Part shown: piece by piece, positions 33,401-64,000 of the stretch
How the letters are laid out: each line of letters opens with the position of its first letter
Position numbering within the stretch: position 1 is the stretch's first letter
Assembly (NCBI GenBank): GCA_002269645.1
Contig: NIVC01000434.1
Location: forward strand, 186,001-250,000
DNA length: 64,000 nt
Source of the DNA: Macrostomum lignano
Taxonomy: Eukaryota
Direction: 5' to 3'
Made by a program: the position numbers and the translations under genes
The notes under the pieces: generated by a model
What the model was told of the DNA's origin: nothing
Database searches by the model: none
The model's input: the letters and a program-made list of their open reading frames with translations, nothing else

Positions 33401-36400
33401 TAATAAAGCAATACAATTTTCTATTTGAGAATGATATGTAATTGAACCATTGACATTGCATTCTAAAAAAACTAAGCTTAGGCTTGTTGCTTATGTATAG
33501 ATACTTTTATATTTATTAATCAAGTGGTCCAAAGGCCAAAAGATTTCTAAATTAATTTAAATGTGTATCATAAATGAAAATTGAAAAGATATTCTAGTCC
33601 CTATAAATTAAGGTTTGAAATACTGTACTTAATAAGATGATATAAATGTTGAATAATTCTAGCATATAGAGTGATCTGGCATTAACTGTTGGCATAATTG
33701 TTATATAGAGGGGCCTTGGATACCCCTTGGTATACAGCTTAATACGAGTATACACAGATCATGAAGACAACAGGTGGGATTGAGTGTGTATATAGCTGTC
33801 TGTCTCTAATACAAAATACTTCATCTTTATGACTATGAATTACATTTTGCTGCCAGGCGAGCTTACTATTTCTTACACTTCTTGTCCCTCCAACATATGC
33901 TCAACAGGTGGACTGCCAATACTGCCCCAACTGCCTAGACTATATGTCATCTGGCGAGGCCAAGGTAAAAAAGAACCGCTGCAGTGCCTGCTATGACTGT
34001 CCCAGCTGCGGCCACACCCTGTCTACTAGGGCCACCTCTGCCACTCTGCCAAGCCCCGACGATCCAACAAAACAGGTCGCTCAGAAAGTCTATTACCTGC
34101 TGTGCGCATTCTGTCGGTAAGTACGAGCGTACTTTATCAGATTCTATATCAGTGCACCCAGAGTCTTGTGTTAATTCACTTCATTGGCCTTATTATGTGT
34201 CAACTAATTCCCAAATATCCCCTGAGAATTTGAGATTTATCACAAATACTTTTAGGGACATGGTGGCTACACGTCACACTCTAATTAGGTGGGTACCCGT
34301 CACAAAGACTCGTATGAACTTGGTGGGTGCCCGTCACAAAGACTCGTATGAACTGGGTAGGTACCCGTTAAAAAGACTTGTATGAACTGGGTGGGTACCC
34401 ATCACAAAGGCACTAGAGCAAAGGTACTCTTCACAAAGACTCATATCAACTAGGATTGGGTGGGTACCCGTCGCACAGAGTCAAAGACTCTACTATATAG
34501 AGTTGCTACTGGTAAGCAACAAAGAACTCAGACATGCCAGACAGTTTCGATCCATCATCACAAAGTCTGAATCTGAATTTTAATAACGCCAATCAGTTGG
34601 ACCACACGAGACGGCGGCATACCGGACCAGCGGGCGCCCTCTGTCCCGTGGCGCAACCTGGCCCAGGGCGCCGAGCTCAGGCAGGACAATTCCAAGCGAT
34701 TAACCACCCTGACCGAGGCGTTTCGCCAGCTGGCTCTGAAAGAGAAGGCCGAGAAGGAGCGCAAGAAGATTGCAGTTAGAAAGAAATCGTTTTTCTCCCC
34801 GGGTCTGACCGATCGATACGGCCTGGCCTCTGTGGCTTTGCGAAAGAAGAGTCTGGCCAATCCCAGCCATTTCACGTGAGTTGCTGGCCTGCACCTGATG
34901 CCTAGCTAGTAGTTGCACTAGTAACCTGGTTATATGCTTTGGTACTAATCCCATTTTATTCCTTCGTGTATTCACCACTGCTGTCCCATTGTGTGTTGGG
35001 GGGGGTCACTGCTGTCCCATTGTGTGTTTGGGGGGGTCACTGCTGTCCCATTGTGTGTTGGGGGAGGTCACTGCTGCCCCATTGTGTGTTTGGGGGGGGG
35101 GTCACTGCTGCCCCATTGTGTGTGTTTGGGGGGGGGGGTCACTGCTGCCCCATTGTGTGTTTGGGGGGGGTCACTGCTGCCCCATTGTGTGTGTTTGGGG
35201 GAGGTCACTGCTGCCCCATTGTGTGTTTGGGGGGGGGTCACTGCTGCCCCATTGTGTGTTTGGAGGGGTCACTGCTGCCCCATTGTGTGTGTTTGGGGGG
35301 GGGGTCACTGCTGCCCCATTGTGTGTTTGGGGGGGGGGGTCACTGCTGCCCCATTGTGTGTTTGGGGGGGGGTCACTGCTGCCCCATTGTGTGTGTTTGG
35401 GGGGAGGTCACTGCTGCCCCATTGTGTGTTTGGGGGGGTCACTGCTGCCCCATTGTGTGTTTGGGGGGGTCACTGCTGCCCCATTGTGTGTGTTTGGGGG
35501 GAGGTCACTGCTGCCCCATTGTGTGTTTGGGGGGGGGTCACTGCTGCCCCATTGTGTGTTTGGAGGGGTCACTGCTGCCCCATTGTGTGTTTGGGGGGGG
35601 GGGTCACTGCTGCCCCATTGTGTGTTGGGGGGGTCACTGCTGCCCCATTGTGTGTGTTTGGGGGGAGGTCACTGCTGCCCCATTGTGTGTTTGGGGGGGG
35701 GGTCACTGCTGCCCCATTGTGTGTTTGGAGGGGTCACTGCTGCCCCATTGTGTGTGTTTGGGGGGGTCACTGCTGCCCCATTGTGTGTGTTTGGGGGGAG
35801 GTCACTGCTGCCCCATTGTGTGTTTGGGGGGGGGGTCACTGCTGCCCCATTGTGTGTTTGGAGGGGTCACTGCTGCCCCATTGTGTGTGTTTGGGGGGGT
35901 CACTGCTGCCCCATTGTGTGTTTGGGGGGGGTCACTGCTGCCCCATTGTGTGTGTTGGGGGTGGGTCACTGCTGCCCCATTGTGTGTTGGGGGGGGGGTC
36001 ACTGCTGCCCCATTGTGTGTTGAGGGGGGTCACTGCTGCCCCATTGTGTGTTGAGGGGGGGTCACTGCTGCCCCATTGTGTATTTGGGGGGGGTCACTGC
36101 TGCCCCATTGTGTGTTTGGAGGGGTCACTGCTGCCCCATTGTGTGTGTTTGGGGGGGTCACTGCTGCCCCATTGTGTGTTTGGGGGGGTCACTGCTGCCC
36201 CATTGTGTGTGTTGGGGGTGGGTCACTGCTGCCCCATTGTGTGTTGGGGGGGTCACTGCTGCCCCATTGTGTGTTGAGGGGGTCACTGCTGCCCCATTGT
36301 GTGTTGAGGGGGGTCACTGCTGCCCCATTGTGTATTTGGGGGGGGGGTCACTGCTGCCCCATAGTGTGTTTGGGGGGGTCACTGCTGCCCCATTGTGTGT

Positions 36401-39400
36401 TTGGGGGGGTCACTGCTGCCCCATTGTGTATTTGGGGGGGGGGTCACTGCTGCCCCATAGTGTGTTTGGGGGGGGGGTCACTGCTGCCCCATTGTGTGTC
36501 CGCAGAACTTGCATGGTGTCGTCTTGCTATTGTATAGTTTGGCCTGTTGAGTGTCCGGCTTTAAAAGCTAAATTAATCTGCAAACTATACACTGCTTTTT
36601 TGGCAGCTTTTGTTTGTCACGGCTCCGTACTAGACAAATATTTAAGCAAAATCAAACTTCAGATTCAAGCTTGTACCGCTATTCGATGACGAAGCTAATG
36701 ACAGGTTAAAACTGTTTATGATTGAATATAATTTATAGAAAACTATTTTTTACTATTTATGTGTCTTTTACTACTTTCAATTCAAGTAATAAGTAGTGCA
36801 TGATATGATTGGGAAGTTTTTTATGCATGCTTGAATTTTTATGTATTTAATTTTTACTGAATTAGATTTTCATTACTCGTACTTTTCTCTTTAACAGTAG
36901 AAAAGGAGTTTTTTACTTTCAATCTAAGCAGCTGCAATCAGAGTTGATGTGCGAATTGCAATTGCAATCTTAAACGTGCTGCAGACAGTCAAATTCGAAC
37001 GCAAACATTCATTTCAGCGTATTGAGATTTCACATCGTCAAAAAACAGAATCTTTCACATTTTCACAAGCTCAATATTATGTATACTCGAAACTTGACAA
37101 ACTCGGAATTTTGCATCGTCAAAAGTTGTGAGCTTGCTAAAAGTTTCGAGCTTGCAAAATGTTCGAGCTTGTGAAGTTTCGAGCTTGTGAAGTTTCGAGA
37201 TTGTGAAGCTTCGAGATTGTAAAAGTTACGAGCTTGGAAGTTTCGAGCTTGTGAAGCTTCGAGCTTGTGAAGTTTCGAGCTTGTGAAGCTTCGAGCTTGT
37301 GAAGCTTCGAGATTGTGAAGCTTCGAGATTATGAATCTTCGAGCTTGTGAAGCTTCGAGCTTGTGAAGCTTCGAGCTTGTGAAGCTTCGAGCTTGTGAAG
37401 CTTCGAGCTTGTGAAGCTTCGAGATTGTGAAGCTTCGAGATTGTGAAGCTTCGAGCTTGTGAAGCTTCGAGATTGTGAAGCTTCGAGCTTGTGAAGCTTC
37501 GAGATTGTGAAGCTTCGAGCTTGTGAAGCTTCGAGATTGTGAAGCTTCGAGATTGTGAAGCTTCGAGATTGCAAAATATTCGAGCTTGTAAAATTTTGAG
37601 CTTGAGAAGCTTCGAGCTTGTGAAGCTTCGAGCTTGTGAAGCTTCAAGCTTGTGAAGCTTCGAGATTGTGAAGCTTCGAGCTTGTGAAGCTTCGAGCTTG
37701 TGAAGCTTCGAGCTTGGAAGTTTCGAGCTTGTGAAGTCTCAAGCTTATAAAAGTTTCGAGCTTGTAAAAAGCGAACCTAAACGCCTAGCTGAACCAACAG
37801 CCACTTCATTAACCACTTAACCGCAGGCCTCCAACTGTGGACATACCCGAAGCTCAAGCCACCGAGGACCCCCCAGACGATCTGGACGAAGCCTACTGGC
37901 TGCCGCCGGTGCCCGAGCAGTCGCCGCTGGCGCCGGGGCTGCACACCCGCAGCAGCCTGTTGCAGCGCCTCGCCGACCCGGAGATCCAGCCGGAGCGCAG
38001 CAGCCAGCTCGCTCCCATCAGCAAGCCGGTGCTGTGCAAACGGTCGCTTCGCTGTCGCCAGTGCGATCACAATTTGAGCAAGCCGGAGCTAAATCCGGCC
38101 GCGCCTAAGTTTAAAATTAACCTGTGCGCCCTTTACAATGTGCCCGAGATGCGCCTGTACAGCGTGGGAGATGGAGAGGGCGGAGAGGGCGACGACTGGT
38201 GAGTGTGTTGGGCAGGTCATCGGAATTGGGGCCGGAAATTTTTATTTGGGGATCAATATGTGGGATGGGGACTCAGTTTGTGGGATAAATATAGTGTGCG
38301 ATGGGGATTTCAGTTTGTGGAATAAATATAATATGGAATGGGGACTCAGTTTGTGGGATAAATATAGTGTGCGATGGGGATTTCAGTTTGTGGGATAAAT
38401 ATAGTGTGCGATGGGGATTTCAGTTTATGGGATAAATATAGTGTGGAATGGGGATTTCAGTTTGTGGAATAAATATAGTGTGGGATGGGGATTTCTGTTT
38501 GTGGAATAAATATAGTGTGGAATGGGGATTTCAGTTTGTGGAATAAATATAGTGTGCGATGGGGATTTCAGTTTATGGGATAAATATAGTGTGGAATGGG
38601 GATTTCAGTTTGTGGGATAAATATAGTGTGCGATGGGGATTTCAGTTTATGGGATAAATATAGTGTGGAATGGGGATTTCAGTTTGTGGAATAAATATAG
38701 TGTGGGATGGGGATTTCTGTTTGTGGAATAAATATAGTGTGGGATGGGGATTTCTGTTTGTGGAATAAATATAGTGTGGGATGGGGACTCAGTTTATGGG
38801 ATAAATATAGTGTGCGATGGGGATTTCTGTTTATGGGATAAATATAGTGTGCGATGGGGATTTCAGTTTGTGGGATAAATATAGTGTGCGATGGGGATTT
38901 CTGTTTATGGGATAAATATAGTGTGGGATGGGGATTTCAGTTTATGGGATAAATATAGTGTGCGATGGGGATTTAAGTTTATGGGATAAATATAGTGTGC
39001 GATGGGGATTTCTGTTTATGGGATAAATATAGTGTGGGATGGGGATTTCTGTTTGTGGAATAAATATAGTGTGCGATGGGGATTTCAGTTTGTGGGATAA
39101 ATATAGTGTGCGATGGGGATTTCAGTTTATGGGATAAATATAGTGTGGAATGGGGATTTCAGTTTGTGGAATAAATATAGTGTGGGATGGGGATTTCTGT
39201 TTGTGGAATAAATATAGTGTGGAATGGGGACTCAGTTTGTGGGATAAATATAGTGTGGGATGGGGATTTCAGTTTATGGGATAAATATAGTGTGGGATGG
39301 GGATTTCAGTTTATGGGATAAATATAGTGTGCGATGGGGATTTCTGTTTATGGGATAAATATAGTGTGGGATGGGGATTTCAGTTTATGGGATAAATATA

Positions 39401-40240
39401 GTGTGCGATGGGGATTTAAGTTTATGGGATAAATATAGTGTGGGATGGGGATTTCAGTTTATGGGATAAGTATAATGTGGAATGGGGATTTCAGTTTAAT
39501 GGATAAATATAGTGTGGGATGGGGATTTCAGTTTATGGGATAAGTATAATGTGGAATGGGGATTTCAGTTTGTGGGATAAGTATAGTGTGGGTTAGGGAT
39601 TTCAGTTTGAGGATAAATGCAGTGGTGGATGAGGATTTCATATTGGGTTTAATGTGTCAAATAGGAATTTCAGTTTGGGAAAAAATTAGACGAAGAAGTT
39701 AGTTTTGCTTGGGTTGATTCGAGCATTGGGATTTACGAGTAGATAAGCCTCTATGGGGATTTTACCGTTTGCAACTCTCCCTAACACTTGCTGATCCTCG
39801 GCCAACCCCCCCCTCCGCTCAGCTGCCAGCTGACTCTGCTGCTCACCAACCCGGCCTCCAAGCCCACCGGAGTCCGTCTGCGCTGCCTGGACAGCCGGCT
39901 AGCCCTGCCAGACCGCGAGTTCAGCCTCGGACCCTGTGGCGACGCCGCCTTAGACCTCGACGATCCCCTGGCCGCCGCCGGCGCCCAGTCGCCGAGCTCG
40001 GAGCCGGACAGGCCCGATGAGGTGGCCTTCCGCGGCCCCGGCAGGCTGGGCCTCCTCGCTCGACTGCGCTGCGCCAGACAGCTGGCCGCTAGCGAAGGCG
40101 TCCGTCTAGAATTGAGCTACGAATTTCGCAATATTGTGCTGCCGTCTGCCGCGGCTGGCGAATCTGTTGAAGTTCGACGGCTGACCGCCGAGCTGCTGCT
40201 GAGGCCGCCAGCGTCGTCTGGCGCTTCTGCTAAGGCTTGA
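30464..40240 (+). CDS. DCTN4: Dynactin subunit 4 (p62), 5 coding exons
   Basis: Exons 30464-30592, 33908-34116, 34597-34875, 37827-38198, 39823-40240, GT-AG and phase-consistent. Motifs [49 protein letters not shown]|[28 protein letters not shown]. Confidence 0.96.
32793..33395 (+). mobile_element. Fossil RTE-type non-LTR reverse transcriptase fragment, heavily mutated
   Basis: [10 protein letters not shown] at 32793; [30 protein letters not shown] at 32941; [14 protein letters not shown] near 33290-33380. Confidence 0.75.
34260..34480. repeat. Degenerate repeat of about 33 bp (GGGTACCCGTCACAAAGACTCGTATGAACT) in DCTN4 intron 2
   Basis: About 5 imperfect copies. Confidence 0.75.
34975..36497. 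repeat. Intronic minisatellite, about 32-37 bp unit GTCACTGCTGCCCCATTGTGTGTTTG(G)n with variable G run
   Basis: More than 40 copies; explains the HCCPIVC/SLLPHC/VTAAPLC ORFs. Confidence 0.95.
37130..37765. repeat. Intronic minisatellite, 16-bp unit GAAGCTTCGAG(C/A)TTGT
   Basis: About 38 copies, each with the palindrome GAAGCTTC. Confidence 0.95.
38260..39610. repeat. Intronic minisatellite, 37-bp unit GGGATAAATATAGTGTGCGATGGGGATTTCAGTTTGT
   Basis: Period 37 at 38355/38392. Confidence 0.95.
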
Positions 40241-41277: not shown

Positions 41278-41598
41278 TTAGACAACGCCGCACACCATCG
41301 TGTTGTCTCCGGTTGAGAAGGCGTCACTCTTAGTCACGCTGCCGAACTTCATCCAGCAGGTGCCGCCGTTGTAGCGGGTCCAGGCGAAGTGGGTGCAGCG
41401 GTGGGTTCGGGCGCAGGCGCCACCGCACTGCTCGCCGGGCATCCGCTCATTCTTCAGATCGCGGTTGTAGAAGTCGCAACCGAACGCCCAGTTGCCGTTC
41501 CAGCGGATGCGTCGAGCCTCTGCTTGAGTTGACACGGCGCAAAGGAGACCCGCGAACACCAGTAGAACCTTCAACGAGCTGATACGGCCGGCCATCAT
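41278..41598 (-). CDS. Small secreted protein: signal peptide plus a single PAN/apple-like six-cysteine domain (106 aa from ATG at 41598)
   Basis: Hydrophobic leader LKVLLVFAGLLCAVSTQA; WAFGCDF..DL..QCGGAC..CTHFAW..GGTCWMK..MVCGV; about 73% identical (56/77 counted by eye) to the N-terminal domain of 44315-45283; AATAAA on the minus strand near 41150. Confidence 0.9.
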   Translation of the reverse strand: MMAGRISSLKVLLVFAGLLCAVSTQAEARRIRWNGNWAFGCDFYNRDLKNERMPGEQCGGACARTHRCTHFAWTRYNGGTCWMKFGSVTKSDAFSTGDNTMVCGVV

Positions 41599-42689: not shown

Positions 42690-43430
42690 ATAGCCTATTG
42701 GTAATTAAAACCATGTACAACTAAAATATTGGGACTTGAACTGGATAGCCTATCGGTAATTAAAACCATGGACAACTAAAGTAGAGGGACATGAACTGGA
42801 TAGCCTATCGGTAATTAAAACCATGTACAACTAAAGTAGAGGGACTTGAACTGGATAGCCTATCGGTAATTAAAACCATGGACAACTAAAGTAGAGGGAC
42901 TTGAACTGGATAGCCTATCGGTAATTAAAACCATGGACAACTAAAGTAGAGGGACATAAACTGGATAGCCTATCGGTAATTAAAACCATGGACAACTAAA
43001 GTAGAGGGACATGAACTGGATAGCCTATCGGTAATTAAAACCATGGACAACTAAAGTAGAGGGACTTGAACTGGATAGCCTATCGGTAATTAAAACCATG
43101 GACAACTAAAGTAGAGGGACTTGAACTGGATAGCCTATCGGTAATTAAAACCATGGACAACTAAAGTAGAGGGACATGAACTGGATAGCCTATCGGTAAT
43201 TAAAACCATGGACAACTAAAGTAGAGGGACTTGAACTGGATAGCCTATCGGTAATTAAAACCATGGACAACTAAAGTATAGGGACTTGAACTGGATAGCC
43301 TATCGGTAATTAAAACCATGTACAACTAAAATATAGGGACTTGAACTGGATAGCCTATCGGTATTCAAAACCATGAACAACTAAAATATAGGGACTTGAA
43401 CTGGATAGCCTATCGGAAATTAAAATCATG
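42690..43430. repeat. Minisatellite, 55-bp unit GGGACTTGAACTGGATAGCCTATCGGTAATTAAAACCATGGACAACTAAAGTAGA
   Basis: Period 55 at 42841/42896/42951; about 13 copies. Confidence 0.95.
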
Positions 43431-43974
43431 GAAATGCTGCTAATGTAAACAGAAATAGCGCACCTGGTGTTTGGTTTCACGTGCGCCAATATGCTTGAAT
43501 GTTTTAGGTGCCTAATGACTGACGAGAGAAACTAATGGGACCAATTAAAGTATCGAATTGATTCAAATTGATCGTTATCAAACTGTTATGTAGGTTCGAA
43601 TCACCTGATAAAAGAAATTATATCTAGTACACGTAGTTGCACCAATAATCCCTTAATGCGTGCTTTTCAATTTGTATTTGGTTTCTGATCAAAACAGCTC
43701 CATGATGATGAACAGCTAAAACAGAAGGACACTAAAGTCGCGAATCGTGCAAATCTTACTGGAGGCCAGTCATTGCTGCAAATTTTTTTGCTTATAAAGG
43801 TCAAAAGGCATATACTTGACTAATTTTGCATTCTGAAGGTTGATAAAGCTGTTAATTTAGTGCACAAACACTGAAAACTTCAAATCTTTCTACGTTCCTA
43901 TATCACTCTATCCGGACCTCGAGTCCTTTGAAACTTCACGATAGCAATCCGGCTAGCTTAGGGTTTGTGTCTCT

Positions 43975-44314: not shown

Positions 44315-45283
44315 TCAGTCGTCATCTCGCCTGCAGCCACTGATAGCGACGAGAGCGTCCGGGCAGCGGACCCTCGAGTACACCATGGCGGGGTTGTCGG
44401 CCCCCCTGAACCAGTCGAATCGCCAGTAGCAGCCGTCGCGAATTTGCGCCGGCAGAGAGCCGCACTCGCTCCGTCTCGACACTCCGCCGTAGCGCTGGCC
44501 CCAGCCGTCTGGCCCCGCGTTCCACTGCGCGCTGCAGCCGTTGAAAATGCCGACACCGCCGCCTGGGATTTGCAAGTCGAACTGGTTCGGGTGCACGTCG
44601 CCTCCGCTGTTGGTGACCTGCACCACCATGGATTTTCCCTGCACAGGGCCGTTGGTGAAGTCCAGCTTGTAGCAGGCGCAGCAGCGACCGCTCTCGTCCA
44701 GACCGGGGATGGTGGCGGCGGCGAAGCCGTAGGCCAGCTGGTCGCTCACCGCCCACGGCTTGTTGTTGTTGCAGGCGAACACGGGTCCGCCGTTGCAGCC
44801 GCTGGCACCGTTGGGATCGCTGGTCACTCCGTAGCCGTCGCGATAGCAGGCGCGCACGTATTTGTTTTGGCCGGGCACTTTGCCTGGCCAGGAACAGCTG
44901 GGCTTGCAGCAGTCCCAGTAGCGGGTGGTGAATCCTGGCACCTTGTTGCCTCCGCCGCCACCGCCGCCCCCGTTGTCTTCAATAACTCCGCACACCATGG
45001 TCATGTCACCAGTTGGGAAGGCGTCGCTCTTTGACACGCTACCTCGCTTCATCCAGCAGGTGCCACCATTCTGTTGAGTCCAGGTGAAATGGGTGCAGCC
45101 CTGAGTGTTGGCGCACCTTCCGCCGCACTGCTCTGAAGGGATTCGCACGTTCGACAAGTCGTTGTTACGAAAGTCGCAGCCATGCGCCCAGTTGTTGCCA
45201 TTCCAGTTGATGTTGGCCAAGACGGAGCTTGAGCACAGGACCAGTACTGCAGCCACTAGTAGGCAGCTGTGTCTTAGCGCCAT
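44315..45283 (-). CDS. Secreted GH45 (subfamily A) endo-beta-1,4-glucanase with N-terminal PAN/apple-like domain and Gly linker, 322 aa, no introns in the CDS
   Basis: Signal peptide; six-Cys PAN-like domain; G8 linker; GH45 signature TTRYWDCCKPSCSW (catalytic base Asp); YGFAAA..CCACYKLDF..MVVQVTNSGGDV (catalytic acid Asp)..QFDLQIPGGGVGIFNGC..GWGQRYGGV..GCYWRFDWFRGADNP. Confidence 0.95.
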   Translation of the reverse strand: MALRHSCLLVAAVLVLCSSSVLANINWNGNNWAHGCDFRNNDLSNVRIPSEQCGGRCANTQGCTHFTWTQQNGGTCWMKRGSVSKSDAFPTGDMTMVCGVIEDNGGGGGGGGNKVPGFTTRYWDCCKPSCSWPGKVPGQNKYVRACYRDGYGVTSDPNGASGCNGGPVFACNNNKPWAVSDQLAYGFAAATIPGLDESGRCCACYKLDFTNGPVQGKSMVVQVTNSGGDVHPNQFDLQIPGGGVGIFNGCSAQWNAGPDGWGQRYGGVSRRSECGSLPAQIRDGCYWRFDWFRGADNPAMVYSRVRCPDALVAISGCRRDDD

Positions 45284-46150: not shown

Positions 46151-48489
46151 TTGAACTAATTCAGCACTACATATTCGATTTAAAATTTTAATTAACAGTA
46201 TCTAAAAATCCTTAGTTTGACCAATCAATGTCATAGCCAATTGACTCACGTAAACTGAAGCCTGTTATATGCCGAATCAGTTAGATCTTTGAGACCACAC
46301 CATGTACAGATTGATTTTGATTTATAGCTACTGTATTCTCATCGAGGGGCGTGTCAGAGAGCTGTCTGCATGTGACAGAAATCCCCTTATCGTCCGCGCT
46401 GTTAGTACGCTCGTACATGACTTCAGTAAAACCGACACGAATCGCATAGATACCGTTCCAGTGAGACCTAACCACATGTTTTTCATGCAACCGGTCAGTT
46501 TTTTGCTGAAATTTACAGGTAGCGATATAAATTTCCCATACACGCATGCATTATAGCATAGCTCTTTCGTTGTAAAAGGTCAATTTATATATGAGGGGAC
46601 ACGTACTCAACAAAATTACTAAATACTGTTGTATTCACTAGCCACTGGGAGAGGTGATCGAACGTCGCTGCTGTGTCTGGGAGCTGTAACAGAGCTCGGA
46701 GAATGAACTGAGGGTGTCTTATGAAGGTGAGGGTTGCCTCCATCAAAGACACCTGAGGGTGAGGATTGGTACTCCATCAGAGAGACCAGAAGGTGTGTAT
46801 CGGCACTTCACCAAAATGCAAGAAGCTGAGGGTGCGGCATTGACGCTCCATCAAAGACACCTGAGTGTTGAGTTGATGCTCCATAAGACACCGTACTGGA
46901 GAGTGTGAGTTGATGCTCCATCAATGGACCGTTGAAAAGGCTTGCTAAACACTGCCATCTCAAAACTTCCCAATTTTCGTGCTTGTGGAACCCCCTATAG
47001 GTCGAGTTATAAATCAAAGAATTAAGGGTGTGTGGATCTGCGCTCCAAGTAAAGCGTCAATGTTGTCTTATATGAGGGGATGGAGCAATGGAGCAATGCA
47101 ATGCAATGGAGAGGCTTTTTATTGACATAAAAAGCCTCTCCATTGCAAGCTAGCTACTTGAAGTAGATATACACGCAATTGTTTGCTTTAACGAAGCAAC
47201 GAGTATATTTTTGAAAAAAATGCATTTAACTTTGCTGGAAAATAACAGCTAAGTTCTCTTTCAGCTGTTGGCCATGTGGCACAATGCAGCCCTTGCTTGA
47301 AATTTCTGTTTCCCTTCGCTCGTAATCTGTACGAGCGGTCCCTACCGCTCGTACCTGTACTCTCAAAAGTGGCGACTACAGAGGGTATCTTCTGATGGCG
47401 CTGAGTATATTCCAAGTCGCCTAATTACACGGCCTTTCTTGGTTTTCTCTATTTTAATCTTGCTTCCTATCTTTCTGGTCACAAGCTGCATGTCGCACTG
47501 CTTAAGTTTACATTAATCTGTTGCCAAGACTATATATTTTACTTGCAATACGAGAAATAACATCATAGTGACATTCCTAGTGTGAACTAGATTGAACTTG
47601 TTTTGTACCTATATTTTATATGTTACTAAATTTGCCACTGCAGTAGACTTTTCGGTACCTTTTTACACGCAAACATATGAATTCTGGGCCTGCTACGGCT
47701 TCCTCGTCACATGCTTCAAATGCAATCGCTTAAAATAGAACTCTTGTTCATAGCTACCCTAAAGTACCTTGATATCTACGTACTATTGTACATGCATGGT
47801 ATACATTTCTAAAAAAAGTCTTGTGTACACCCTTCTCTTCTTCCGAAGGGTATAAATAAAACTGCATCTGAGCTTCAGCCTTTTCCTTTTTCCTCCGCTC
47901 TTTGCGTAGCTACGAGTACTGCATGCTTGCTTAGAAACTCAATTGCTCTCGTTTTTTATATTTCAATTATCCACTGAGGAACAAATCATGGGAAAATTTA
48001 TGAGATAATACATTATAGTCATATCGATATATTATTGTTTTATACTTCTCGGTAATCACGTCCATTTCACTTGATTGTCTGGTACTTAATCTCTTTAGAT
48101 TCAGTCATGTGTCAAGATGCATAACATGCAGCAGATACCCTGTTGTATCCACAATTGGTGGGTATTAAATCAGCAGAGAAGATGACAACTTCTGGATTTA
48201 TCTGGTCTATAATATGCATGGCTATGATTATCGGTAAGTTTTTCGCTGTGAAATTGTGTGTACAGTACCGATAGCTTTGATATGTTTACGCATAGATGTA
48301 TCTGCTAAGAGACATAAGTGCTGCACATTGAATTTTTAGTTAAATTTCATAGCTGCTTGACACGTATGTGTACAATATAAAATCAATGGTGGGCTGAGGG
48401 GGGAGTATAGATAGAGTGAGGAGAAGGTGGACGGTGGATCAGACGGTAGAAAATATAATTCGTATACGAATTGAAGACACGTGTGTATC

Positions 48490-48695
48490 TAGAGAGGAGA
48501 GAAGAGGGGTGAGAGAAGCGAGAGGAGAGGAAGGAGAGGAGAGAGAGAAGAGAGAAGAGGGGAGAGAGGAGGGGGAAGAAAGGAAAGAAGAGAGGGAAGA
48601 GAAGAGAGGGGATGATCGAAGAGGGTAAAGAGAAGAGAGGGTAGAGAGGAGAGAAGAGAGAAGAGAGAGAAGAAGGGAGAGCAAAGAGAGGCGAA
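48490..48695. repeat. GA-rich low-complexity tract
   Basis: Purine-only composition. Confidence 0.85.
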
Positions 48696-49929
48696 AAGAG
48701 ACACCAGCCTAGCTTAAGCAGACAAGAAATTGCTATTGTGATTTTTCAAAGGAGCCGAGGGCCGGATAAATCGTAGAAGGGCTGGAGTTTTCCTATACCC
48801 TTGATCAAGATGAAGTGAGTAGAGACCATAGAAGGAGAAGGGGCAGAAAAAAGTATATATGGGCGAAGGTTTAGAGATAGGAGAGGGAGATAATTAGTGA
48901 GAGTAAACAAGGGTAAGAAATGACTGGGAGTGAAATACAATTTCTGTTTACGAGCTATACGCTCGTAGATGTGAAAATTGCACAGAATAAAAGCTTTGTA
49001 TTTACATGCAAATTTAGTGCATTACTCTTCATGATTTTTTAGCAATTGCTAAGATTTTTAGACAAAAAAATATATTCAGAATAAAGTTTAAGCAGGTCAA
49101 GTTTCAGCCCAATCCATCAATCCAGTGCAGAGAAAACTCTGTTTGTAATCCGGGAGACCTTTCTGGACCACCCTGTATATTTACAGAACATTACGCTCGC
49201 AGGAAAGCAAAGCTTTGCATTTTTATTTGTGCATGTTTTGTTTCTTAAGGTACATGTACTACACTGTATCATACTATGTACAAGCTTATTCATAATTAAC
49301 AATCTGTACAGTAGAAAAAATACAACTCAAGTGTTATATTAACATATGATTACACAATTCAAACAACGATATAACAATGTAGAAAATGTTCTAAGATGCA
49401 ATCGATATATAAAGCCAGGTAGAGCAATCATGCAATTATTAAATTTACATGTGTAAACCTCATGTATAGGTTATTCTACGTGTAAGTTCTCACAAGTTCT
49501 TCAATTGCAATGCATTCGTCCAGTGTAATGTACATGTACATGTACAATACGGCCGGACTGTACATATGGTACTGCATGGTTACATCCGATGCGCTCACTT
49601 GGCCGCGGGCCCCTTACACAGGAAAGGACGCTTCGCTAGCTATGTGGATTGTTCATGCTACTGCGCTGCTGCATACAGTGTACATGCGATACACGCAGCT
49701 TTTATACATGCATGGGCTTATCCACACCGTGCTCCCAAACGAATTGCAGCGTCCACATAAATCTAAAATATATTTTTTTCGATGTGTTGGACATGGTATG
49801 CAGTTAACTACGCGTTTTTAATATTTAATTTGCAGCTTTGATTTTTATGTAATTAAATATCTATTACATTATATGCCTAGTGGGCCTGTGCCAGTTCTAC
49901 AAATATAAACTGCTGTTAGATTGACATAC

Positions 49930-50430
49930 GTGTAGCCTCCGGAGAAATCTCAAAAGGTATTGCTCTGCTGCTATAGGTTGAACAAATAATAGTGTTTTCA
50001 TGAACAAAGGCAGTGCATATACCTGTTGAATCTGTGGCTTGTTTTGGTTTTCTGTCTGCGATCTGAATATCCCAGACAGCTTGTTGCGAAGCTGCAGATG
50101 GATCAAGTCCAGAAAAATCCATTGACTGAGGCGTTTCAATAGCCATTTTAATTGCTTTGTTTGTGTATGTTTTCGATCGCAATTGTCTACAAATCAAAAG
50201 TTTAATAAAAATTAAATATCGATCCGGCCATGTCGTCGATAGATATAGGAATTTTTTATATCAATAATTAAAAACGAATTGCATTCAATATACCTTCAGT
50301 CCTCCAGTAAACTGAATACGCAGAACGTGGGAACCTTGTCAGTTGTCGAATTAAATTTTCTGATTTAGCATCAGCAAGTAGGTGCGAATTGAATCACTTC
50401 CAGCTGCTTGAACAACTGTAATTCTGGGTC
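49930..50430 (-). other. Possible exons of an unrecognised gene or pseudogene
   Basis: Acceptor/donor pairs bracket about 50430-50293 and 50186-49930; the joined frame reads ..IRQLTRFPRSAYSVYWRTE|DNCDRK..LKWLLKRLSQWIFLDLIHLQLRNKL..AAEQYLLRFLRRLH|, with one in-frame TGA early; no family recognised. Confidence 0.25.
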
Positions 50431-50675
50431 TGAGAGTAATAAAAAGCTCTAGTAAATAGAATTACGGGCGATACTAAATGTACAAGCGATGCCTTCACTT
50501 TCGTTGTTGACTTTTGTTATGTTTACGAGCTAAGAGCTAGTAGCTAGCTACTCGTACTACGTGCTAACTGGCCATAAATATATATAGTTTGTGCAGTGCA
50601 GTCATGCGCTCACAATTTTACTAGGAACTGTTATAAACATACGTAGTGGCATGAGTGGCCGTTACATCAATGTTC

Positions 50676-57230: not shown

Positions 57231-57325
57231 TTTCAGCATAGAGCGAGTGCCGAGAAAGCTTACAGCAAACTAAAATTGAAAATGCGTTCGCACAGGTGAC
57301 TACTGACAGTAATGCGCATCAAAAG

Positions 57326-60300
57326 TTAGTAACTCGGCGCAATATCAAATTCGATGGTAATTACCTTAGATCTCGAGCTCCATACCAATGTCAGGCAGAT
57401 CCGGGTCGCCTTCGGGCAGCACTTCCGGATGGCGGAGGCTCGGCTCAAACAATTGGCTGCCGCGCAGATCAGGCTGAGCTGCGGCTGGCTGTTCTGGAGT
57501 GGACTGATCGGCTGGTTCAACTTTGCTTTCATCACTCAACTCGCAGGGCAGCATTGGCCGTTCTGTCTGATGCGGCGGCTTCTGCGGTCTGTCGGCCATC
57601 ATCTGTGGCACCTTGATGATGTTGTTGCGGTGTACGAGCATTTCTGCGGGGCGTCCATGTCAGGCTGTCGCAGGCTGGATCCAATAGGCTACTTTGCCGA
57701 CCTTTCTGTTAACCTTGTACATACTCTTGTACAGTCGGTGCGGTGGAACTTTGGCAATTTGCCCAACTCGAGCTTCGGGTTGGCTAAGCAGACCAGATCT
57801 CCGGGCTGCAGTTCCATGGGCTTGGGTCGGTTCTCGTAATATTCTTCGCGGCGTTGGATCTCAGCTCGCAATCGCTGTCGCACAATCCTCTCGGTCTCGG
57901 CCAGTCTGCGCTGATGCTTCGCGATGTACTCGGGGAGGTCCAGCGATACGTCCAAGCAGTCTAGGGTGTTGTCGATTGGGTACCAATAAGGCACTCCGTA
58001 AACAACGTAATGTGGCGAGAATCCCGTTGTACGATTGACAGCTGATCGCAAGGCTGTCAAAGTGGCTGGCAGCATCTTGTCCCACTGTTGATGATCTTTG
58101 GGCGAGTTTGGGCGATCCCAGGGCGAGTATGGCGGCATCGTTGTCTGCCGGATGCCATAGACTTCGCAGAAATGTCAAAACTCGTGCCCAGTGAACTGCT
58201 TGCCTTGGTCCGAATGGATCCACGCGGGGATTCCGGTGATCGGGAAGACTTGTTCCTGCAGCAGAGTTATGATCGTCTTGGCCCGCTGATTCTTCATGGC
58301 GAAGGCGAATAGATATTTCGACGTAGTGTCAACATAGGTGAGGATGTACTTGTTGCCTCAGTCTGTCGGGTCGCCAGTAGGGCCCATGATGTCGATTGCG
58401 CATTGCCCATAGATTTCGCAGACCGGAAACGATTGTACATGCACTGGGATGCGTCGCCGTCCTTTGCTCTGAGTGCAGGTCTGGCAGGAAGCAACATAGT
58501 CGGACACAGCCTTGGCCAGGGCCGGTCATCAGAACCTCTCGCGCACCTTCGCGATGGTGAGATCTCGGCCCATGTGTCCGCAATAGGGTGAACCATGCAG
58601 GTCGGCGAACACCGTGGCATCGAGACTCTTTGGCAGGACGATCCTTGCTTTATCCTCTTCGCCAACATCGTCGAGATGGATAACTAGTAGTCCGTCGTCT
58701 CGGACTTCCAATTGCTCATAGAATGCTAGGAGATTTCTCTCGTCTCTCGTCAGGTTTAATCGCTGATTCAGCGGCGGCTTCGGTTGTCAACTTTCGATTA
58801 AGTTAATCAGCATCGCAATAGCAGAGTCAGCTCGCTGACGGGTCTGGAGCTCCTCGCGAGTGACTGGCCTTGGAATGTGATCCGTTAAATTCAAAGTTTG
58901 GCATTGGTTAGTCGGATTAGTCAGCGCAGCTTCAGCTGTGGCGGCGTGGTTCGGGGTCGGGAGCTCCCTCTGCACGATCGCTACTCTGGCCTGTTGCCGG
59001 GTCGTTGAAGAATTTGAAGGCCGATCTTCGTCGGTCATGTCAGCGTTGGCTTCGTTAGCATTAGATTCGTCAGCAGATGAGAGTGAGTCAGCGGAACTGT
59101 CGATATCAAGGCTGAATCTCACCTTCTTGAACTCAGGATGGCAAGCGGGTTGGCAGCGGTCTTCGCTGGCTACGCTGTGGTCGCTATCCTTGTCGCCTTC
59201 AGCTAGTAGCCGGCGGCTCCTTGACGGGCAACATGTGCTGCTGAAGCTGGTGGGCGACCTCTGTGAGTCCCGATAACGACTGGCAGATGGCCTCGACTTC
59301 GTCGCCGGTGGATGCAGCTCTGTCAGCGGCTTGCTGTCGGCTGTTGGTGTTGCAGGCGGCGTAGTCTCGCCGTTGGACTCAGTTGATTTCGTCGGCGGCT
59401 TTTGTCGGTGAAGGCGGGTCGGTTGCTTCTTGCTTGGTGGAGGACTAGGGTGGCTGCTGTCGTGGACCTTCGGCGCCGCTGCGCCAGTTATCGTGGCTGG
59501 CTGCTTACTTTGGTCCTCGACTGCAGCCTCTCGCTGAGCCTCCTCCAAACATTCATCGTCATCCTCAGGCCGTCTTGAGAGACTGTTGGCATTCTGATGC
59601 TGACTTGATTTTCGATGCTGGATCTGGAACTCGAATTCACTTAGGCGCTGTAGCCATCGTCCAAAAATTCCTTCTTGCTGAGTTCGTCAGAGAATCCAGG
59701 TTAACGCGGCATGATCGGTTCGGCAGATGAACTTCTTGGCCAGCAGGTAGAATCGAAAGTGTCGCATCCCATCTATGACTGCCAAGAGTTCCTGTTTAGT
59801 GATTGGATGCCGGGCTTCGGCTGGTTTGAGTCGCCGGGAGAAATAGCCAATTGGTCGCTCAACTCCATCAGCTTGGCGTTGGCTCAGGCAGGCTCCGATT
59901 CTGGTCGCAGAAGCATCCATGTCCAGGATAAACATTACACTAGGATCCTCGCTGAATTGCGGATACGCGAGCACTGATGTCGAAATCAAGGCTGCTTTGA
60001 GCTGGTTGAACGCATCTTGCTGGGCTTTTTCCCATAGACAATTGAAATTTCAGATTTTCTTCTCTTTGATTAAATCGTGGAGCGGAGCAGCAAGTTCTAC
60101 GTAGCCAGGTACAAATTTAGCATAATAGGCGCACGTGCAGACAAAACTTTTAAGTTGTCGGGCTGTTCTTGGTCTTGGCCAGGTTTGAATTGCCTCAATC
60201 TTCGCCAGATCGGTCTTGATTCCGTCCTTCGTTACCACATGTCCCAGATAGTTTAGACTTTCCCGAAATAGATGGCACTTTTTGCCTTTGAACTTTAAGT

Positions 60301-61740: not shown

Positions 61741-62063
61741 GAAATGGATCCCTTCGAGGTCGCTTAGGTACAGAGTTCTGTACAGGTGCGGCGGAGGCGG
61801 TCTCAGCAATGGCCTGCTGAGCGACTAAAGTCCACGGCGGGGACTTTAGTGCTGGCTCGGCTGCTGGATGGCGCTGCCCCCGATGGCGCGTCCAGCCATC
61901 CCGTTTCCCGAGCTGCCGTTGCGCTGGGACGCGGTGCTGGCCGACCGTCGGTGCAGGCATTCGTCGGCGCGATGCTCGCGGTTGCACCTGTAGCACATTG
62001 CACTTTGTCGCTGCAGCTGATAGGGCGGCGGGCGCAAACTCGACTGCGGCTGCTGCTGCTGCT

Positions 62064-63880: not shown

Positions 63881-64000
63881 GCTGCTGCTGCTGCTGCTGG
63901 CGACGTTGACCTCCTGCTGGCGGCGTTCTCGGCGGCGGGTTGCTGCCGTCGCGTGGTTGCTGAAGTCGATGGAACTGGTCATGTTGCACAATTCGTGTGC

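What the first reader, a model, noticed from the sequence alone, without database searches (positions are those of the whole stretch)
44315..45283. Intact PAN-GH45 cellulase embedded among animal genes: probable horizontal acquisition with unusual architecture
Seen: full GH45 subfamily A signature with both catalytic Asp, no introns in the CDS while all neighbouring host genes are intron-rich, 4 kb from DCTN4, and flanked by host-type minisatellites (against contamination). Established: subfamily A GH45s in animals (Bursaphelenchus nematodes, phytophagous beetles) are attributed to transfer from fungi, where the usual appended module is CBM1. A PAN-like module in that position is not an architecture I recognise. 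Inference: digestion of algal or plant glucans.
Basis: partly seen in the sequence, partly recalled or inferred. Interest (0 to 1): 0.75.

Follow-up and report, generated by a model that had tools for sequence, protein, structure and literature searches.

The report
Flatworm cellulase gene shared with rotifers
The flatworm Macrostomum lignano carries an intact, host-integrated gene for a secreted cellulase with an unusual PAN "handle". The same composite gene occurs in rotifers, tardigrades and springtails, and the flatworm copy looks borrowed from the rotifer lineage rather than taken directly from a fungus.

Summary
**Observation confirmed.** Window 44315..45283 (-) is an intact, intronless 322-aa ORF: signal peptide, PAN/apple module, poly-Gly linker, then a GH45 subfamily-A domain with Tyr122, Asp124, Asp229 and Asp236.

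**Host context.** The window is Macrostomum lignano.
- The gene lies 4.1 kb from intron-bearing DCTN4 and is flanked by minisatellites.
- A colinear duplicate locus (95-97% identical) also carries it, with an RNA-seq-derived gene model.
- Its GC content matches host exons, not its nearest relatives.
- Contamination is effectively excluded.

**Interpretation partly right.**
- The architecture is not unique. PAN+GH45 also occurs in bdelloid rotifers, tardigrades, a springtail and many environmental sequences.
- In my bootstrap trees the flatworm sequence nests among bdelloid sequences (95%). Its closest relative lies on a rotifer-lineage contig.
- Transfer from the rotifer lineage, or from a shared donor, is therefore more likely than a direct fungal gift or simple vertical descent.

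**The PAN module.**
- This PAN subtype is a portable module. Chytrid fungi attach it to GH5, GH7 and GH20 enzymes, and environmental proteins attach it to GH16 and GH128-type enzymes.
- That suggests a substrate-targeting role like a carbohydrate-binding module. This is inferred, not shown.
- A stand-alone PAN gene (41278..41595) is a partial tandem duplicate of the cellulase gene.

**Literature.** Two GH45 surveys I read and my keyword searches mention neither the PAN fusion nor a flatworm GH45.

The parts
44315..45283 (-). Complete intronless CDS (322 aa plus stop) of the PAN-GH45 protein
   Evidence: ORF; Pfam; 98% identical to M. lignano BOX15_Mlig002476g1
45215..45283 (-). Predicted signal peptide (aa 1-23, MALRHSCLLVAAVLVLCSSSVLA)
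   Evidence: Hydrophobic N-terminus read from the sequence; helix 2-19 in the model. No dedicated signal-peptide predictor was available.
44981..45214 (-). PAN/apple module (aa 24-101) with six conserved Cys (C36, C53, C57, C63, C76, C98)
   Evidence: PAN_4 and PAN_1 above their cut-offs; invariant Cys; pLDDT 84-91; structural neighbours SML-2 lectin, FXI/kallikrein apple domains, HGF N domain and MIC4
44936..44980 (-). Flexible Gly-rich linker (aa 102-116, contains GGGGGGGG)
   Evidence: pLDDT below 50 at residues 104-111; sequence
44324..44935 (-). GH45 catalytic domain (aa 117-320)
   Evidence: PF02015, E = 2.6e-73; PDB sequence hits at E = 1e-70 to 1e-76; Foldseek target-normalised TM 0.90-0.96, rmsd 1.2-1.6 A, to subfamily-A structures
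44912..44914 (-). Codon of Asp124, the predicted general base (aligns to H. insolens Asp10)
   Evidence: Alignment; present in 117 of 118 family members; codon gtc on the plus strand read
44576..44578 (-). Codon of Asp236, the predicted general acid (aligns to H. insolens Asp121)
   Evidence: Alignment; present in 114 of 118 members; codon read
41278..41595 (-). Stand-alone secreted PAN gene (105 aa, intronless). It appears to be a partial tandem duplicate of the signal-peptide and PAN part of the cellulase gene.
   Evidence: ORF; PAN_4 27.2 bits; 63% aa identity over aa 1-101 and 73% DNA identity over 229 bp to the GH45 gene; conserved in the duplicate locus L001
45408..46159 (.). Upstream minisatellite, 37 bp x 20.3 copies
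   Evidence: also present in the duplicate locus L001
43983..44224 (.). Downstream CT-rich minisatellite (47-bp and 85-bp periods)
33839..40237 (+). Host gene DCTN4 (dynactin p62), 3' part with several exons and long introns; convergent with the PAN-only gene
   Evidence: Dynactin_p62 hits on ORF segments 33839-34117 and 37813-38199; last exon ends near 40237; annotated as Dynactin_p62 in L001

Best explanation
The ORF is a functional, transcribed, host-integrated gene of the flatworm Macrostomum lignano. It encodes a secreted, modular endo-beta-1,4-glucanase. After signal-peptide cleavage, an N-terminal PAN/apple module held by three disulfides is tethered by a flexible poly-Gly linker to a GH45 subfamily-A double-psi beta-barrel. 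That domain would cleave beta-1,4-glucan chains by the inverting mechanism, with Asp124 as base and Asp236 as acid. The PAN module most likely acts like a carbohydrate-binding module, holding the enzyme on a polysaccharide or glycan surface. The gene belongs to a single PAN-GH45 family shared by bdelloid rotifers, tardigrades and springtails. The GH45 part is ultimately of the fungal subfamily-A type. The Macrostomum lineage most likely obtained the already fused gene horizontally, from the rotifer lineage or from a donor shared with it. That transfer was long enough ago for the gene to take on host-exon composition, to be copied in the genome duplication and to spawn a PAN-only tandem duplicate. 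Shown here: the domains, catalytic residues, predicted fold, genomic integration, family distribution and tree position. Inferred: secretion, enzyme activity, substrate, PAN function, and the direction and source of transfer.
For: Identity and integrity. Host integration: the window is colinear at 95-97% identity with contig NIVC01000164.1 of M. lignano assembly GCA_002269645.1, which carries the same gene between a histone deacetylase gene and Dynactin_p62. DCTN4 exons are confirmed in the window. That assembly has 180 Mb in duplicated blocks of at least 95% identity, 15% tandem and simple repeats, and about 5 introns per gene (PMC5730564). Transcription: the GenBank models of that assembly come from an RNA-seq genome-guided transcriptome, and model P0001 starts 18 nt upstream of the ATG. 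Constraint: the two copies differ at 8 synonymous and 7 non-synonymous codons and both are intact. Composition: GC is 0.63 and GC3 0.79, against 0.63 and 0.71 for DCTN4 exons and 0.34-0.41 for the noncoding flanks. The closest relatives have GC 0.43, 0.43 and 0.36. Family: every PAN+GH45 protein in the top 120 hits that carries an organism name comes from an animal. Tree: the GH45-only tree has a 39-sequence clade with 79% bootstrap that holds all named bdelloid sequences, Darwinula and M. lignano. With both domains (282 columns, 500 bootstraps), bdelloids plus M. lignano separate from tardigrade and springtail sequences in 98%, and M. lignano is nested among named bdelloids in 95%. The sister sequence P0005 lies on a 310-kb contig whose neighbouring MFS gene has only bdelloid named relatives at 55-65% identity, with the next-best named hit at 38% or less. 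PAN as a portable targeting module: 2018 cluster representatives carry this PAN subtype. Fusion partners include GH5, GH6, GH7, GH16, GH20, GH128-type and GH45 domains. The named owners of the GH7, GH5 and CBM1-PAN-GH20 fusions are chytrid fungi, and their PAN modules are 41-51% identical to the flatworm module with the same motif. The nearest solved PAN structures include the galactose-binding lectin SML-2 and TgMIC4.
Against: The trees are neighbour-joining trees on Kimura distances. No likelihood method was available, and support within the rotifer-type clade is weak in the GH45-only tree (5-35%). Bdelloids carry several paralogues, so ancient paralogy followed by loss could mimic nesting. 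The hosts of the sister sequences P0004-P0007 are unnamed, and the rotifer assignment of P0005 rests on one neighbouring gene. I could not search other flatworm genomes or transcriptomes directly, so the absence elsewhere in flatworms rests only on what is in the protein database. The same PAN subtype also sits on non-glycosidase proteins: astacins in a tardigrade and a receptor kinase in Hydra. It is therefore not exclusively a carbohydrate-enzyme module and could mediate protein or glycoprotein contacts. No activity, binding or tissue-expression data exist. The laboratory diet is diatoms, which to my knowledge are not rich in cellulose, so the natural substrate is unclear.
Confidence: 0.65

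Rival explanations
1. Vertical inheritance. A PAN-GH45 gene was already present in an early protostome or spiralian ancestor and was lost in most phyla. The flatworm copy nests among rotifer copies only because of ancient paralogues that were lost differentially.
For: The same architecture occurs in two spiralian groups (flatworm, rotifers) and two ecdysozoan groups (tardigrades, springtails). The flatworm and rotifer sequences group against the tardigrade and springtail ones in 98% of bootstraps, which loosely mirrors the Spiralia/Ecdysozoa split. Both domains are highly conserved across all of these animals, with PAN identity of 59-64%, which fits a single old fusion. Bdelloids do have several paralogue lineages. 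A related PAN subtype exists on native animal proteins in Hydra and Ramazzottius.
Against: No other flatworm, mollusc, annelid, nematode or monogonont rotifer protein with PAN+GH45 appears among the 120 best hits, so dozens of independent losses would be needed. The ostracod Darwinula falls inside the rotifer-type clade, against the species tree. M. lignano is nested among bdelloids rather than sister to them in 95% of bootstraps. No intron position is shared: the gene is intronless in M. lignano, A. vaga and the environmental relatives, while the Folsomia and Hypsibius introns lie at different sites. Published trees also reject a single animal origin of GH45 (PMC6509783; PMC13084967).
Confidence: 0.2
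2. Direct fungus-to-flatworm transfer of a GH45 gene, with a PAN module added afterwards in the flatworm.
For: The GH45 domain is 52-56% identical to fungal subfamily-A structures by Foldseek and superposes on them. Mucoromycota GH45s reach about 60% identity over the domain. Chytrid fungi use the same PAN subtype on other glycoside hydrolases.
Against: Rotifer-type PAN-GH45 proteins are closer in both domains: 65-73% identity overall and 61-64% in the PAN module. The two domains give the same grouping. No named fungal PAN+GH45 protein is among the top 120 hits. An independent fusion producing the same module order, linker position and PAN subtype is improbable.
Confidence: 0.06
3. Contamination or assembly chimera: the gene belongs to a rotifer, fungus or food organism that was sequenced together with the worm.
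For: The closest relatives are rotifer-lineage sequences. The gene is intronless and forms a local GC peak in the composition profile.
Against: The gene is present in two independent colinear loci, with host DCTN4 on one side and host repeats on both. The GC peak equals that of host exons and is 20 points above the nearest relatives. The minisatellites abutting the gene are shared by both loci. The duplicate copy has an RNA-seq-derived gene model.
Confidence: 0.02
4. Real and host-integrated, but not a digestive cellulase. It could act on another beta-glucan or glycan (glucomannan, xyloglucan, mixed-linkage glucan, algal or biofilm exopolymers, oomycete or dinoflagellate walls). It could also have a non-nutritional role, with the PAN module anchoring it to mucus or to a cell-surface glycoprotein rather than to the substrate. 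This rival concerns function only and is compatible with any of the origin scenarios.
For: Beetle GH45s include glucomannan- and xyloglucan-active members (PMC6509783). The laboratory diet is diatoms. The PAN subtype also occurs on astacins, a trypsin and receptor kinases. Known PAN/apple domains bind galactose, heparin or proteins (structures listed).
Against: The complete catalytic set and close similarity to proven endo-1,4-glucanases, including the springtail enzyme 5h4u. Fusion of the same PAN subtype to the classical cellulase families GH5, GH6 and GH7.
Confidence: 0.25

Closest known systems
GH45 subfamily-A endoglucanases of fungi (Humicola insolens EGV/Cel45A, Thielavia terrestris Cel45A, Melanocarpus albomyces 20K, Neurospora crassa Cel45A)
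   Same: The same fold (TM 0.90-0.94), 52-56% identity and the same Tyr/Asp/Asp/Asp active-site set. The modular layout is also the same: a binding-type module and a flexible linker attached to the catalytic core.
   Different: The appended module is an N-terminal PAN/apple domain, not a CBM1 or CBM10, and the linker is poly-Gly. The gene is encoded in an animal genome.
Horizontally acquired animal GH45s: springtail Cryptopygus antarcticus CaCel (5h4u), oribatid mites, Bursaphelenchus and Aphelenchoides nematodes, Phytophaga beetles, bdelloid rotifer Adineta ricciae, tardigrades (Busch 2019 PMC6509783; Muelbaier 2024 PMC13084967)
   Same: A subfamily-A-type GH45 integrated in an animal genome, with a patchy distribution and a gene tree that conflicts with animal phylogeny. 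Busch 2019 already recovered tardigrade and rotifer sequences together.
   Different: No flatworm is reported in those surveys, and neither paper mentions the PAN module. Here the nearest relatives are other animals' genes rather than fungal ones. That points to spread of an already fused gene among small invertebrates, or from one shared donor.
PAN_4+GH45 proteins of bdelloid rotifers, tardigrades and Folsomia candida (database entries such as 'Endoglucanase-5' of Hypsibius exemplaris and Folsomia candida)
   Same: Identical architecture (signal peptide, 1-2 PAN modules, short linker, GH45), 53-73% identity over the full length and the same invariant Cys and catalytic residues.
   Different: The host phylum differs. 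The gene is intronless in M. lignano and A. vaga but has 2 introns in Hypsibius and 5 in Folsomia. In A. vaga and Folsomia the adjacent gene is PAN fused to an unknown ~200-aa domain, whereas in M. lignano it is PAN alone.
Carbohydrate-binding PAN/apple domains: Sarcocystis muris lectin SML-2, Toxoplasma MIC4 apple domains, HGF N domain. From memory only: the Phytophthora CBEL protein, which combines CBM1 and PAN/apple modules.
   Same: PAN fold with disulfide-stabilised hairpin loops, the best non-GH45 structural matches of the model. This gives precedent for glycan binding by PAN domains.
   Different: Only 13-17% identity. The subtype found here has its own strict motif (WNGNNWA..CDF...CGG.C..T.GCTHFTW...GGTCWMK...MVCG), and its ligand is unknown.
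Chytrid fungal glycoside hydrolases carrying the same PAN subtype (Chytriomyces PAN-PAN-GH7 and CBM1-PAN-PAN-GH20; Boothiomyces PAN-PAN-GH5)
   Same: The same PAN subfamily, 41-51% identical with a shared motif, placed N-terminal to a secreted polysaccharide hydrolase.
   Different: The catalytic families differ. No named chytrid PAN-GH45 was found among the top hits.

Membership tests
Glycoside hydrolase family 45, subfamily A | Full-length match to the family profile above the curated threshold | tested here: met
   PF02015, 246.9 bits against a cut-off of 27, profile positions 2-214 of 214
Glycoside hydrolase family 45, subfamily A | Catalytic base Asp (H. insolens D10) and catalytic acid Asp (D121), plus Y8 and D114 | tested here: met
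   Asp124, Asp236, Tyr122 and Asp229 align to those positions. The H. insolens numbering was taken from a sequence I recalled from memory, and it proved self-consistent in that alignment.
Glycoside hydrolase family 45, subfamily A | Six-stranded double-psi beta-barrel fold superposable on solved subfamily-A enzymes | tested here: met
   AlphaFold2 model with pLDDT about 90 in the domain. Foldseek TM 0.90-0.96 and rmsd 1.2-1.6 A to 5glx, 5h4u, 4eng, 1l8f and 6mvj. This is a predicted structure, not an experimental one.
Glycoside hydrolase family 45, subfamily A | Endo-beta-1,4-glucanase activity with inversion of configuration | not testable with these tools
   Requires expression and enzyme assays
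PAN/apple domain superfamily | Profile match above the curated threshold | tested here: met
   PAN_4 28.1 bits against 27; PAN_1 22.9 bits against 21.4. Both are marginal. A subtype profile finds 2018 relatives.
PAN/apple domain superfamily | Conserved cysteine core (three disulfides) and PAN fold | tested here: met
   Six invariant Cys in 40 sequences. The best non-GH45 structural neighbours are all PAN/apple domains: SML-2, Colletotrichum Cu-oxidase PAN, FXI/kallikrein, HGF N and MIC4. Disulfide pairing itself was not examined.
Carbohydrate-binding module (functional class) | A discrete fold found appended to catalytic modules of several carbohydrate-active enzyme families | tested here: met
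   The same PAN subtype is fused to GH5, GH6, GH7, GH16, GH20, GH45 and GH128-type domains. It is also fused to proteases and kinases, so it is not exclusive to such enzymes.
Carbohydrate-binding module (functional class) | Demonstrated binding to a carbohydrate ligand | not testable with these tools
   Requires pull-down, ITC or glycan-array experiments
Horizontally acquired gene in an animal genome | Physical linkage to bona fide host genes, excluding contamination | tested here: met
   DCTN4 lies 4.1 kb away in the window. The same arrangement occurs in an independent duplicate locus that also carries HDAC. Composition matches host exons.
Horizontally acquired gene in an animal genome | Gene tree incongruent with the species tree, and a patchy taxonomic distribution | tested here: met
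   Nested among bdelloid sequences in 95% of 500 NJ bootstraps. Darwinula falls inside the same clade. No other flatworm is among the 120 best hits. Only distance methods were used, and flatworm sampling is limited to what the database holds.
Horizontally acquired gene in an animal genome | Identified donor lineage | tested here: inconclusive
   The rotifer lineage is the nearest, but the sister sequences are unnamed environmental contigs. A shared third-party donor cannot be excluded.

The most novel reading that the evidence does not exclude
An already fused PAN-GH45 cellulase gene moved between animals, from the bdelloid-rotifer lineage into the Macrostomum lineage, and perhaps also into the ostracod Darwinula. 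This would be a rare case of metazoan-to-metazoan horizontal transfer of a digestive enzyme. In addition, the PAN subtype it carries would be an unrecognised family of carbohydrate-binding modules shared by chytrid fungi and micro-invertebrates, taking the place that CBM1 holds in higher fungi.
Probability: 0.3. Interest if true: 0.75.

Novelty: new variant of a known kind. Interest (0 to 1): 0.55.

Why it matters
Endogenous animal cellulases of family GH45 are a textbook example of horizontal gene transfer into animals, so far told as several separate gifts from fungi. This locus adds a fifth phylum, flatworms, in a genetically tractable model with transgenesis.

It also brings out two things that the two surveys I read and my keyword searches do not mention.

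1. Many micro-invertebrate GH45s share one composite PAN-GH45 architecture. They form a group in which the flatworm gene sits among rotifer genes. That raises the possibility that the gene spread between animals, or from one common donor, rather than by independent fungal transfers.
2. The PAN module is a recurrent appendage of cellulases, glucanases and a hexosaminidase in chytrid fungi and in environmental eukaryotes. That makes it a candidate new carbohydrate-binding module family, and this can be tested directly in vitro.

If confirmed, it would change how CAZyme annotation pipelines treat PAN domains. It would also change estimates of how much small invertebrates contribute to polysaccharide turnover.

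Tried and rejected
- **Exact look-up of the window protein** in the contig index found nothing. The 98% identical paralogue P0001 was used instead.
I replaced it with stop-to-stop ORF segments.
- **Word-indexed search with the PAN-only protein** reached only 14 candidates. The exhaustive profile search replaced it.
- **Structure prediction of the PAN-only protein** gave pLDDT 57. That is too poor for a fold search, so PAN neighbours were read from the full-length model.
- **The ~200-aa 'X' domain** fused to PAN in the A. vaga and Folsomia neighbour genes matches nothing in Pfam or in the PDB by sequence. It has no remnant in the window. My impression that it is DPBB/expansin-like is from memory and untested.
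- **Shared introns** as evidence of common descent: none found. The nearest Folsomia and Hypsibius introns are 4 codons apart.
- **L003 and L004 were not available in the sandbox**, so intron mapping was done from ORF lists.
- **Literature searches**: Macrostomum plus cellulase, and PAN plus glycoside hydrolase/CBM/chytrid, returned nothing relevant. One query was rejected for syntax.
- **Host of the closest unnamed relatives P0004 and P0006**: these are short environmental contigs without informative neighbours.
- **The local GC peak as a foreign signature**: considered and rejected, because host exons have the same composition.
Full report
**1. The observation**

An ATG-to-stop ORF of 322 codons lies at 44315..45283 on the minus strand.
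- Pfam finds a full-length Glyco_hydro_45 domain at residues 117-318 (E = 2.6e-73). It also finds PAN_4 (28.1 bits, cut-off 27) and PAN_1 (22.9 bits, cut-off 21.4) at residues 37-90.
- The best solved relatives by sequence are GH45 subfamily-A enzymes, at E = 1e-70 to 1e-76. The top hit is the springtail cellulase 5h4u, followed by fungal enzymes.
- In an alignment of 118 family members, Tyr122, Asp124, Asp229 and Asp236 occupy the positions of H. insolens Tyr8, Asp10, Asp114 and Asp121. These positions are nearly invariant.
- An AlphaFold2 model built on 40 family members has mean pLDDT 86. The PAN module scores 84-91, the catalytic domain about 90, and only the signal peptide and the poly-Gly linker score low.
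- The catalytic domain superposes on subfamily-A crystal structures at TM 0.90-0.96 and rmsd 1.2-1.6 A. The best non-GH45 matches are PAN/apple domains: Sarcocystis lectin SML-2, a Colletotrichum copper oxidase, factor XI and kallikrein, the HGF N domain and MIC4.

So the domain reading by the first stage is correct.

**2. Whose genome, and is the gene really in it?**

- The protein is 98% identical to M. lignano BOX15_Mlig002476g1.
- That gene lies on a 252-kb contig of assembly GCA_002269645.1, between a histone deacetylase gene and Dynactin_p62.
- The window is colinear with that locus at 95-97% DNA identity, including the minisatellites next to the gene. The assembly is known to hold 180 Mb of duplicated blocks of at least 95% identity because of a chromosome duplication (PMC5730564), so these are two copies in one genome.
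- In the window, Dynactin_p62 Pfam hits fall on plus-strand exons 3.7 kb apart. The last exon ends near 40237, 4.1 kb from the GH45 stop codon.
- Minisatellites flank the gene. Tandem and simple repeats make up 15% of this genome, and genes average about five introns.
- The local GC peak is not a foreign signature. The ORF has GC 0.63 and GC3 0.79, DCTN4 exons have 0.63 and 0.71, and the noncoding flanks have 0.34-0.41.
- The nearest relatives elsewhere have GC 0.43, 0.43 and 0.36.
- The GenBank models of that assembly derive from an RNA-seq genome-guided transcriptome. Model P0001 begins 18 nt upstream of the ATG, so the duplicate copy is transcribed.
- The two copies differ at 8 synonymous and 7 non-synonymous codons, and both are intact.

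Contamination or a chimeric assembly is therefore very unlikely.

**3. The architecture is not unique**

Among the 120 best database hits, PAN_4+GH45 proteins come from:
- bdelloid rotifers (Rotaria spp., Adineta vaga, A. steineri, Didymodactylos);
- tardigrades (Hypsibius exemplaris, Paramacrobiotus, some with two PAN modules);
- the springtail Folsomia candida;
- many unnamed environmental contigs.

A Darwinula (ostracod) model starts at the end of the PAN module. Every protein with this architecture that carries an organism name is from an animal. Fungal hits carry CBM1 or CBM10 instead.

The PAN modules are strikingly conserved across phyla, at 59-64% identity and with one strict motif. 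The same module order and linker position recur throughout. This fits a single fusion event.

**4. Tree position**

- A neighbour-joining tree of the GH45 domain alone (203 columns, 200 bootstraps) gives a 39-sequence clade with 79% support. It contains all named bdelloid sequences, Darwinula, M. lignano and environmental sequences. Tardigrade sequences are sister to it, followed by a springtail-type group. Mucoromycota fungi are separate, and the deep nodes are unsupported.
- Using both domains (282 columns, 500 bootstraps), bdelloids plus M. lignano separate from tardigrade and springtail sequences in 98% of replicates. M. lignano is nested among named bdelloid sequences in 95%. Bdelloids are monophyletic without it in 5%.
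- Its sisters are four environmental proteins, P0004-P0007, at Kimura distances of 0.26-0.34. Named bdelloids lie at 0.37-0.45, and tardigrade and springtail sequences at 0.54-0.57.
- P0005 lies on a 310-kb contig. The MFS transporter gene next to it has only bdelloid rotifer proteins as named relatives (55-65% identity), and the next-best named hit is at 38% or less. That contig is therefore from a rotifer-lineage organism, divergent from the sequenced genera.
- Intron data do not support common descent. The gene is intronless in M. lignano, A. vaga, P0004, P0005 and P0006. Hypsibius has two introns and Folsomia five, at different positions.

I conclude that acquisition of the already fused gene from the rotifer lineage, or from a donor shared with it, is the best reading. 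The main rival is vertical descent with many losses and hidden paralogy.

Caveats: only distance trees were possible, bdelloids have several paralogues, and flatworm sampling is limited to what the database holds.

**5. What the PAN module is likely to do**

- A profile of stand-alone PAN proteins of this subtype finds 2018 cluster representatives, 186 of them at E <= 1e-30.
- Among 62 long hits, the fusion partners include GH16, GH128-type (Glyco_hydro_cc), GH5, GH6, GH7, GH20 and GH45. They also include astacins, a trypsin, a GMC oxidoreductase, an ADP-ribosyltransferase, TSP1 repeats and receptor kinases.
- Named owners:
  - PAN-PAN-GH7 in Chytriomyces confervae and C. hyalinus;
  - PAN-PAN-GH5 in Boothiomyces;
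  - CBM1-PAN-PAN-GH20 in Chytriomyces sp.;
  - astacin-PAN in the tardigrade Ramazzottius;
  - a receptor kinase in Hydra.
- The chytrid modules are 41-51% identical to the flatworm module and share its motif.

The module is portable and disulfide-rich, sits where CBM1 sits in other fungal cellulases, and has lectin-type structural neighbours. All of this points to a substrate-targeting role. This is inference. The protease and kinase fusions show the module is not restricted to carbohydrate enzymes.

**6. Mechanism proposed**

The protein is secreted after signal-peptide cleavage. The PAN module docks on a glycan surface, and the poly-Gly tether lets the GH45 barrel reach beta-1,4-glucan chains. 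Asp124 acts as base and Asp236 as acid in an inverting hydrolysis.

The natural substrate is open. The laboratory diet is the diatom Nitzschia, while GH45 enzymes elsewhere act on amorphous cellulose, glucomannan or xyloglucan.

**7. Literature**

- GH45 in springtails, oribatid mites, nematodes, beetles, rotifers and tardigrades is published, with multiple transfers from fungi inferred (PMC6509783, PMC13084967).
- Busch et al. even recovered tardigrade and rotifer sequences together.
- Neither of those two papers mentions a PAN module or a flatworm, and targeted searches found nothing on Macrostomum cellulases or on PAN as a glycoside-hydrolase appendage.

**8. Verdict**

- The locus is a new phylum-level member of the class of horizontally acquired animal GH45 genes.
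- It belongs to a PAN-GH45 variant that is widespread in databases but that my searches found undescribed.
- It shows a plausible but unproven animal-to-animal route of spread.
- It provides a testable candidate for a new carbohydrate-binding module family.

Noticed in passing
window 41278..41595 (-): A stand-alone, intronless gene for a 105-aa secreted PAN protein lies 2.7 kb downstream of the cellulase gene on the same strand. It is 63% identical at the aa level to the signal-peptide and PAN part of the cellulase, and 73% identical in DNA over 229 bp. It ends exactly at the 'MVCGV' motif that closes the PAN module, is followed by AT-rich sequence and is conserved in the duplicate locus. It is probably a partial tandem duplicate, and its function is unknown.
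   Followed up: partly
L002 4438-5367 (-) (Adineta vaga); L003 6307-7355 (-) (Folsomia candida): In both a rotifer and a springtail, the gene lying head-to-head with PAN-GH45 encodes a nearly identical PAN module fused to a ~200-aa domain ('...TRHGATEYGACALP...CGHILNVDCGHGSLDIIV...'). That domain has no Pfam or PDB sequence match. Rotaria P0130 and A. vaga P0216 carry the same fusion. Within each species the PAN modules of the two adjacent genes are almost the same, which suggests gene conversion or a recent inverted duplication. The conserved pairing across phyla is unexplained.
   Followed up: partly
window 57300-64000 (mostly minus strand): Retrotransposon-type ORFs: a reverse transcriptase with 'YLDDVIVYS' (60050-60799), an RNase H-like ORF (61646-63019), a second RT-like ORF (62943-63989) and integrase-like fragments (57689-58138). 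This region does not align to the duplicate locus L001, where a histone deacetylase gene lies instead.
   Followed up: no
window 34900-36700 (+), inside a DCTN4 intron: A large GC-rich minisatellite produces spurious ORFs of 220-440 aa in all three frames (repeats reading '[10 protein letters not shown] / GGHCCPIVC / GGSLLPHCV'). A second array at about 37130-37770 shows up as many staggered matches to L001.
   Followed up: no
window 46529-50578 and 42715-43396: About 4 kb and 0.7 kb are present in the window but absent from the otherwise colinear duplicate locus L001. The 4-kb segment has no ORF of 110 aa or more. The second gap overlaps the 55-bp minisatellite at 43000-43432.
   Followed up: no
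proteins P0174, P0211, P0239 (chytrid fungi); P0161/P0289 (Hydra); P0209 (Ramazzottius): The same narrowly defined PAN subtype occurs on chytrid GH7, GH5 and GH20 enzymes, on a Hydra receptor tyrosine kinase annotated 'torso', and on tardigrade astacins. The distribution across chytrids and animals is unusual. Whether the module is ancestral to opisthokonts or has moved between them was not examined.
   Followed up: partly
protein P0037 (Darwinula stevensoni, ostracod): A GH45 model that begins with the last residues of a PAN module ('MVCGVV...') is 72-74% identical to the flatworm enzyme and falls inside the rotifer-type clade. This is either another transfer into an arthropod or rotifer DNA in that assembly. 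I did not check.
   Followed up: no
proteins P0124 and P0126 (environmental): P0124 continues after its PAN module into a sequence that looks like the start of a GH16 domain. P0126 has a matrixin (Peptidase_M10) segment before its PAN module. These are further examples of the module's mobility.
   Followed up: no
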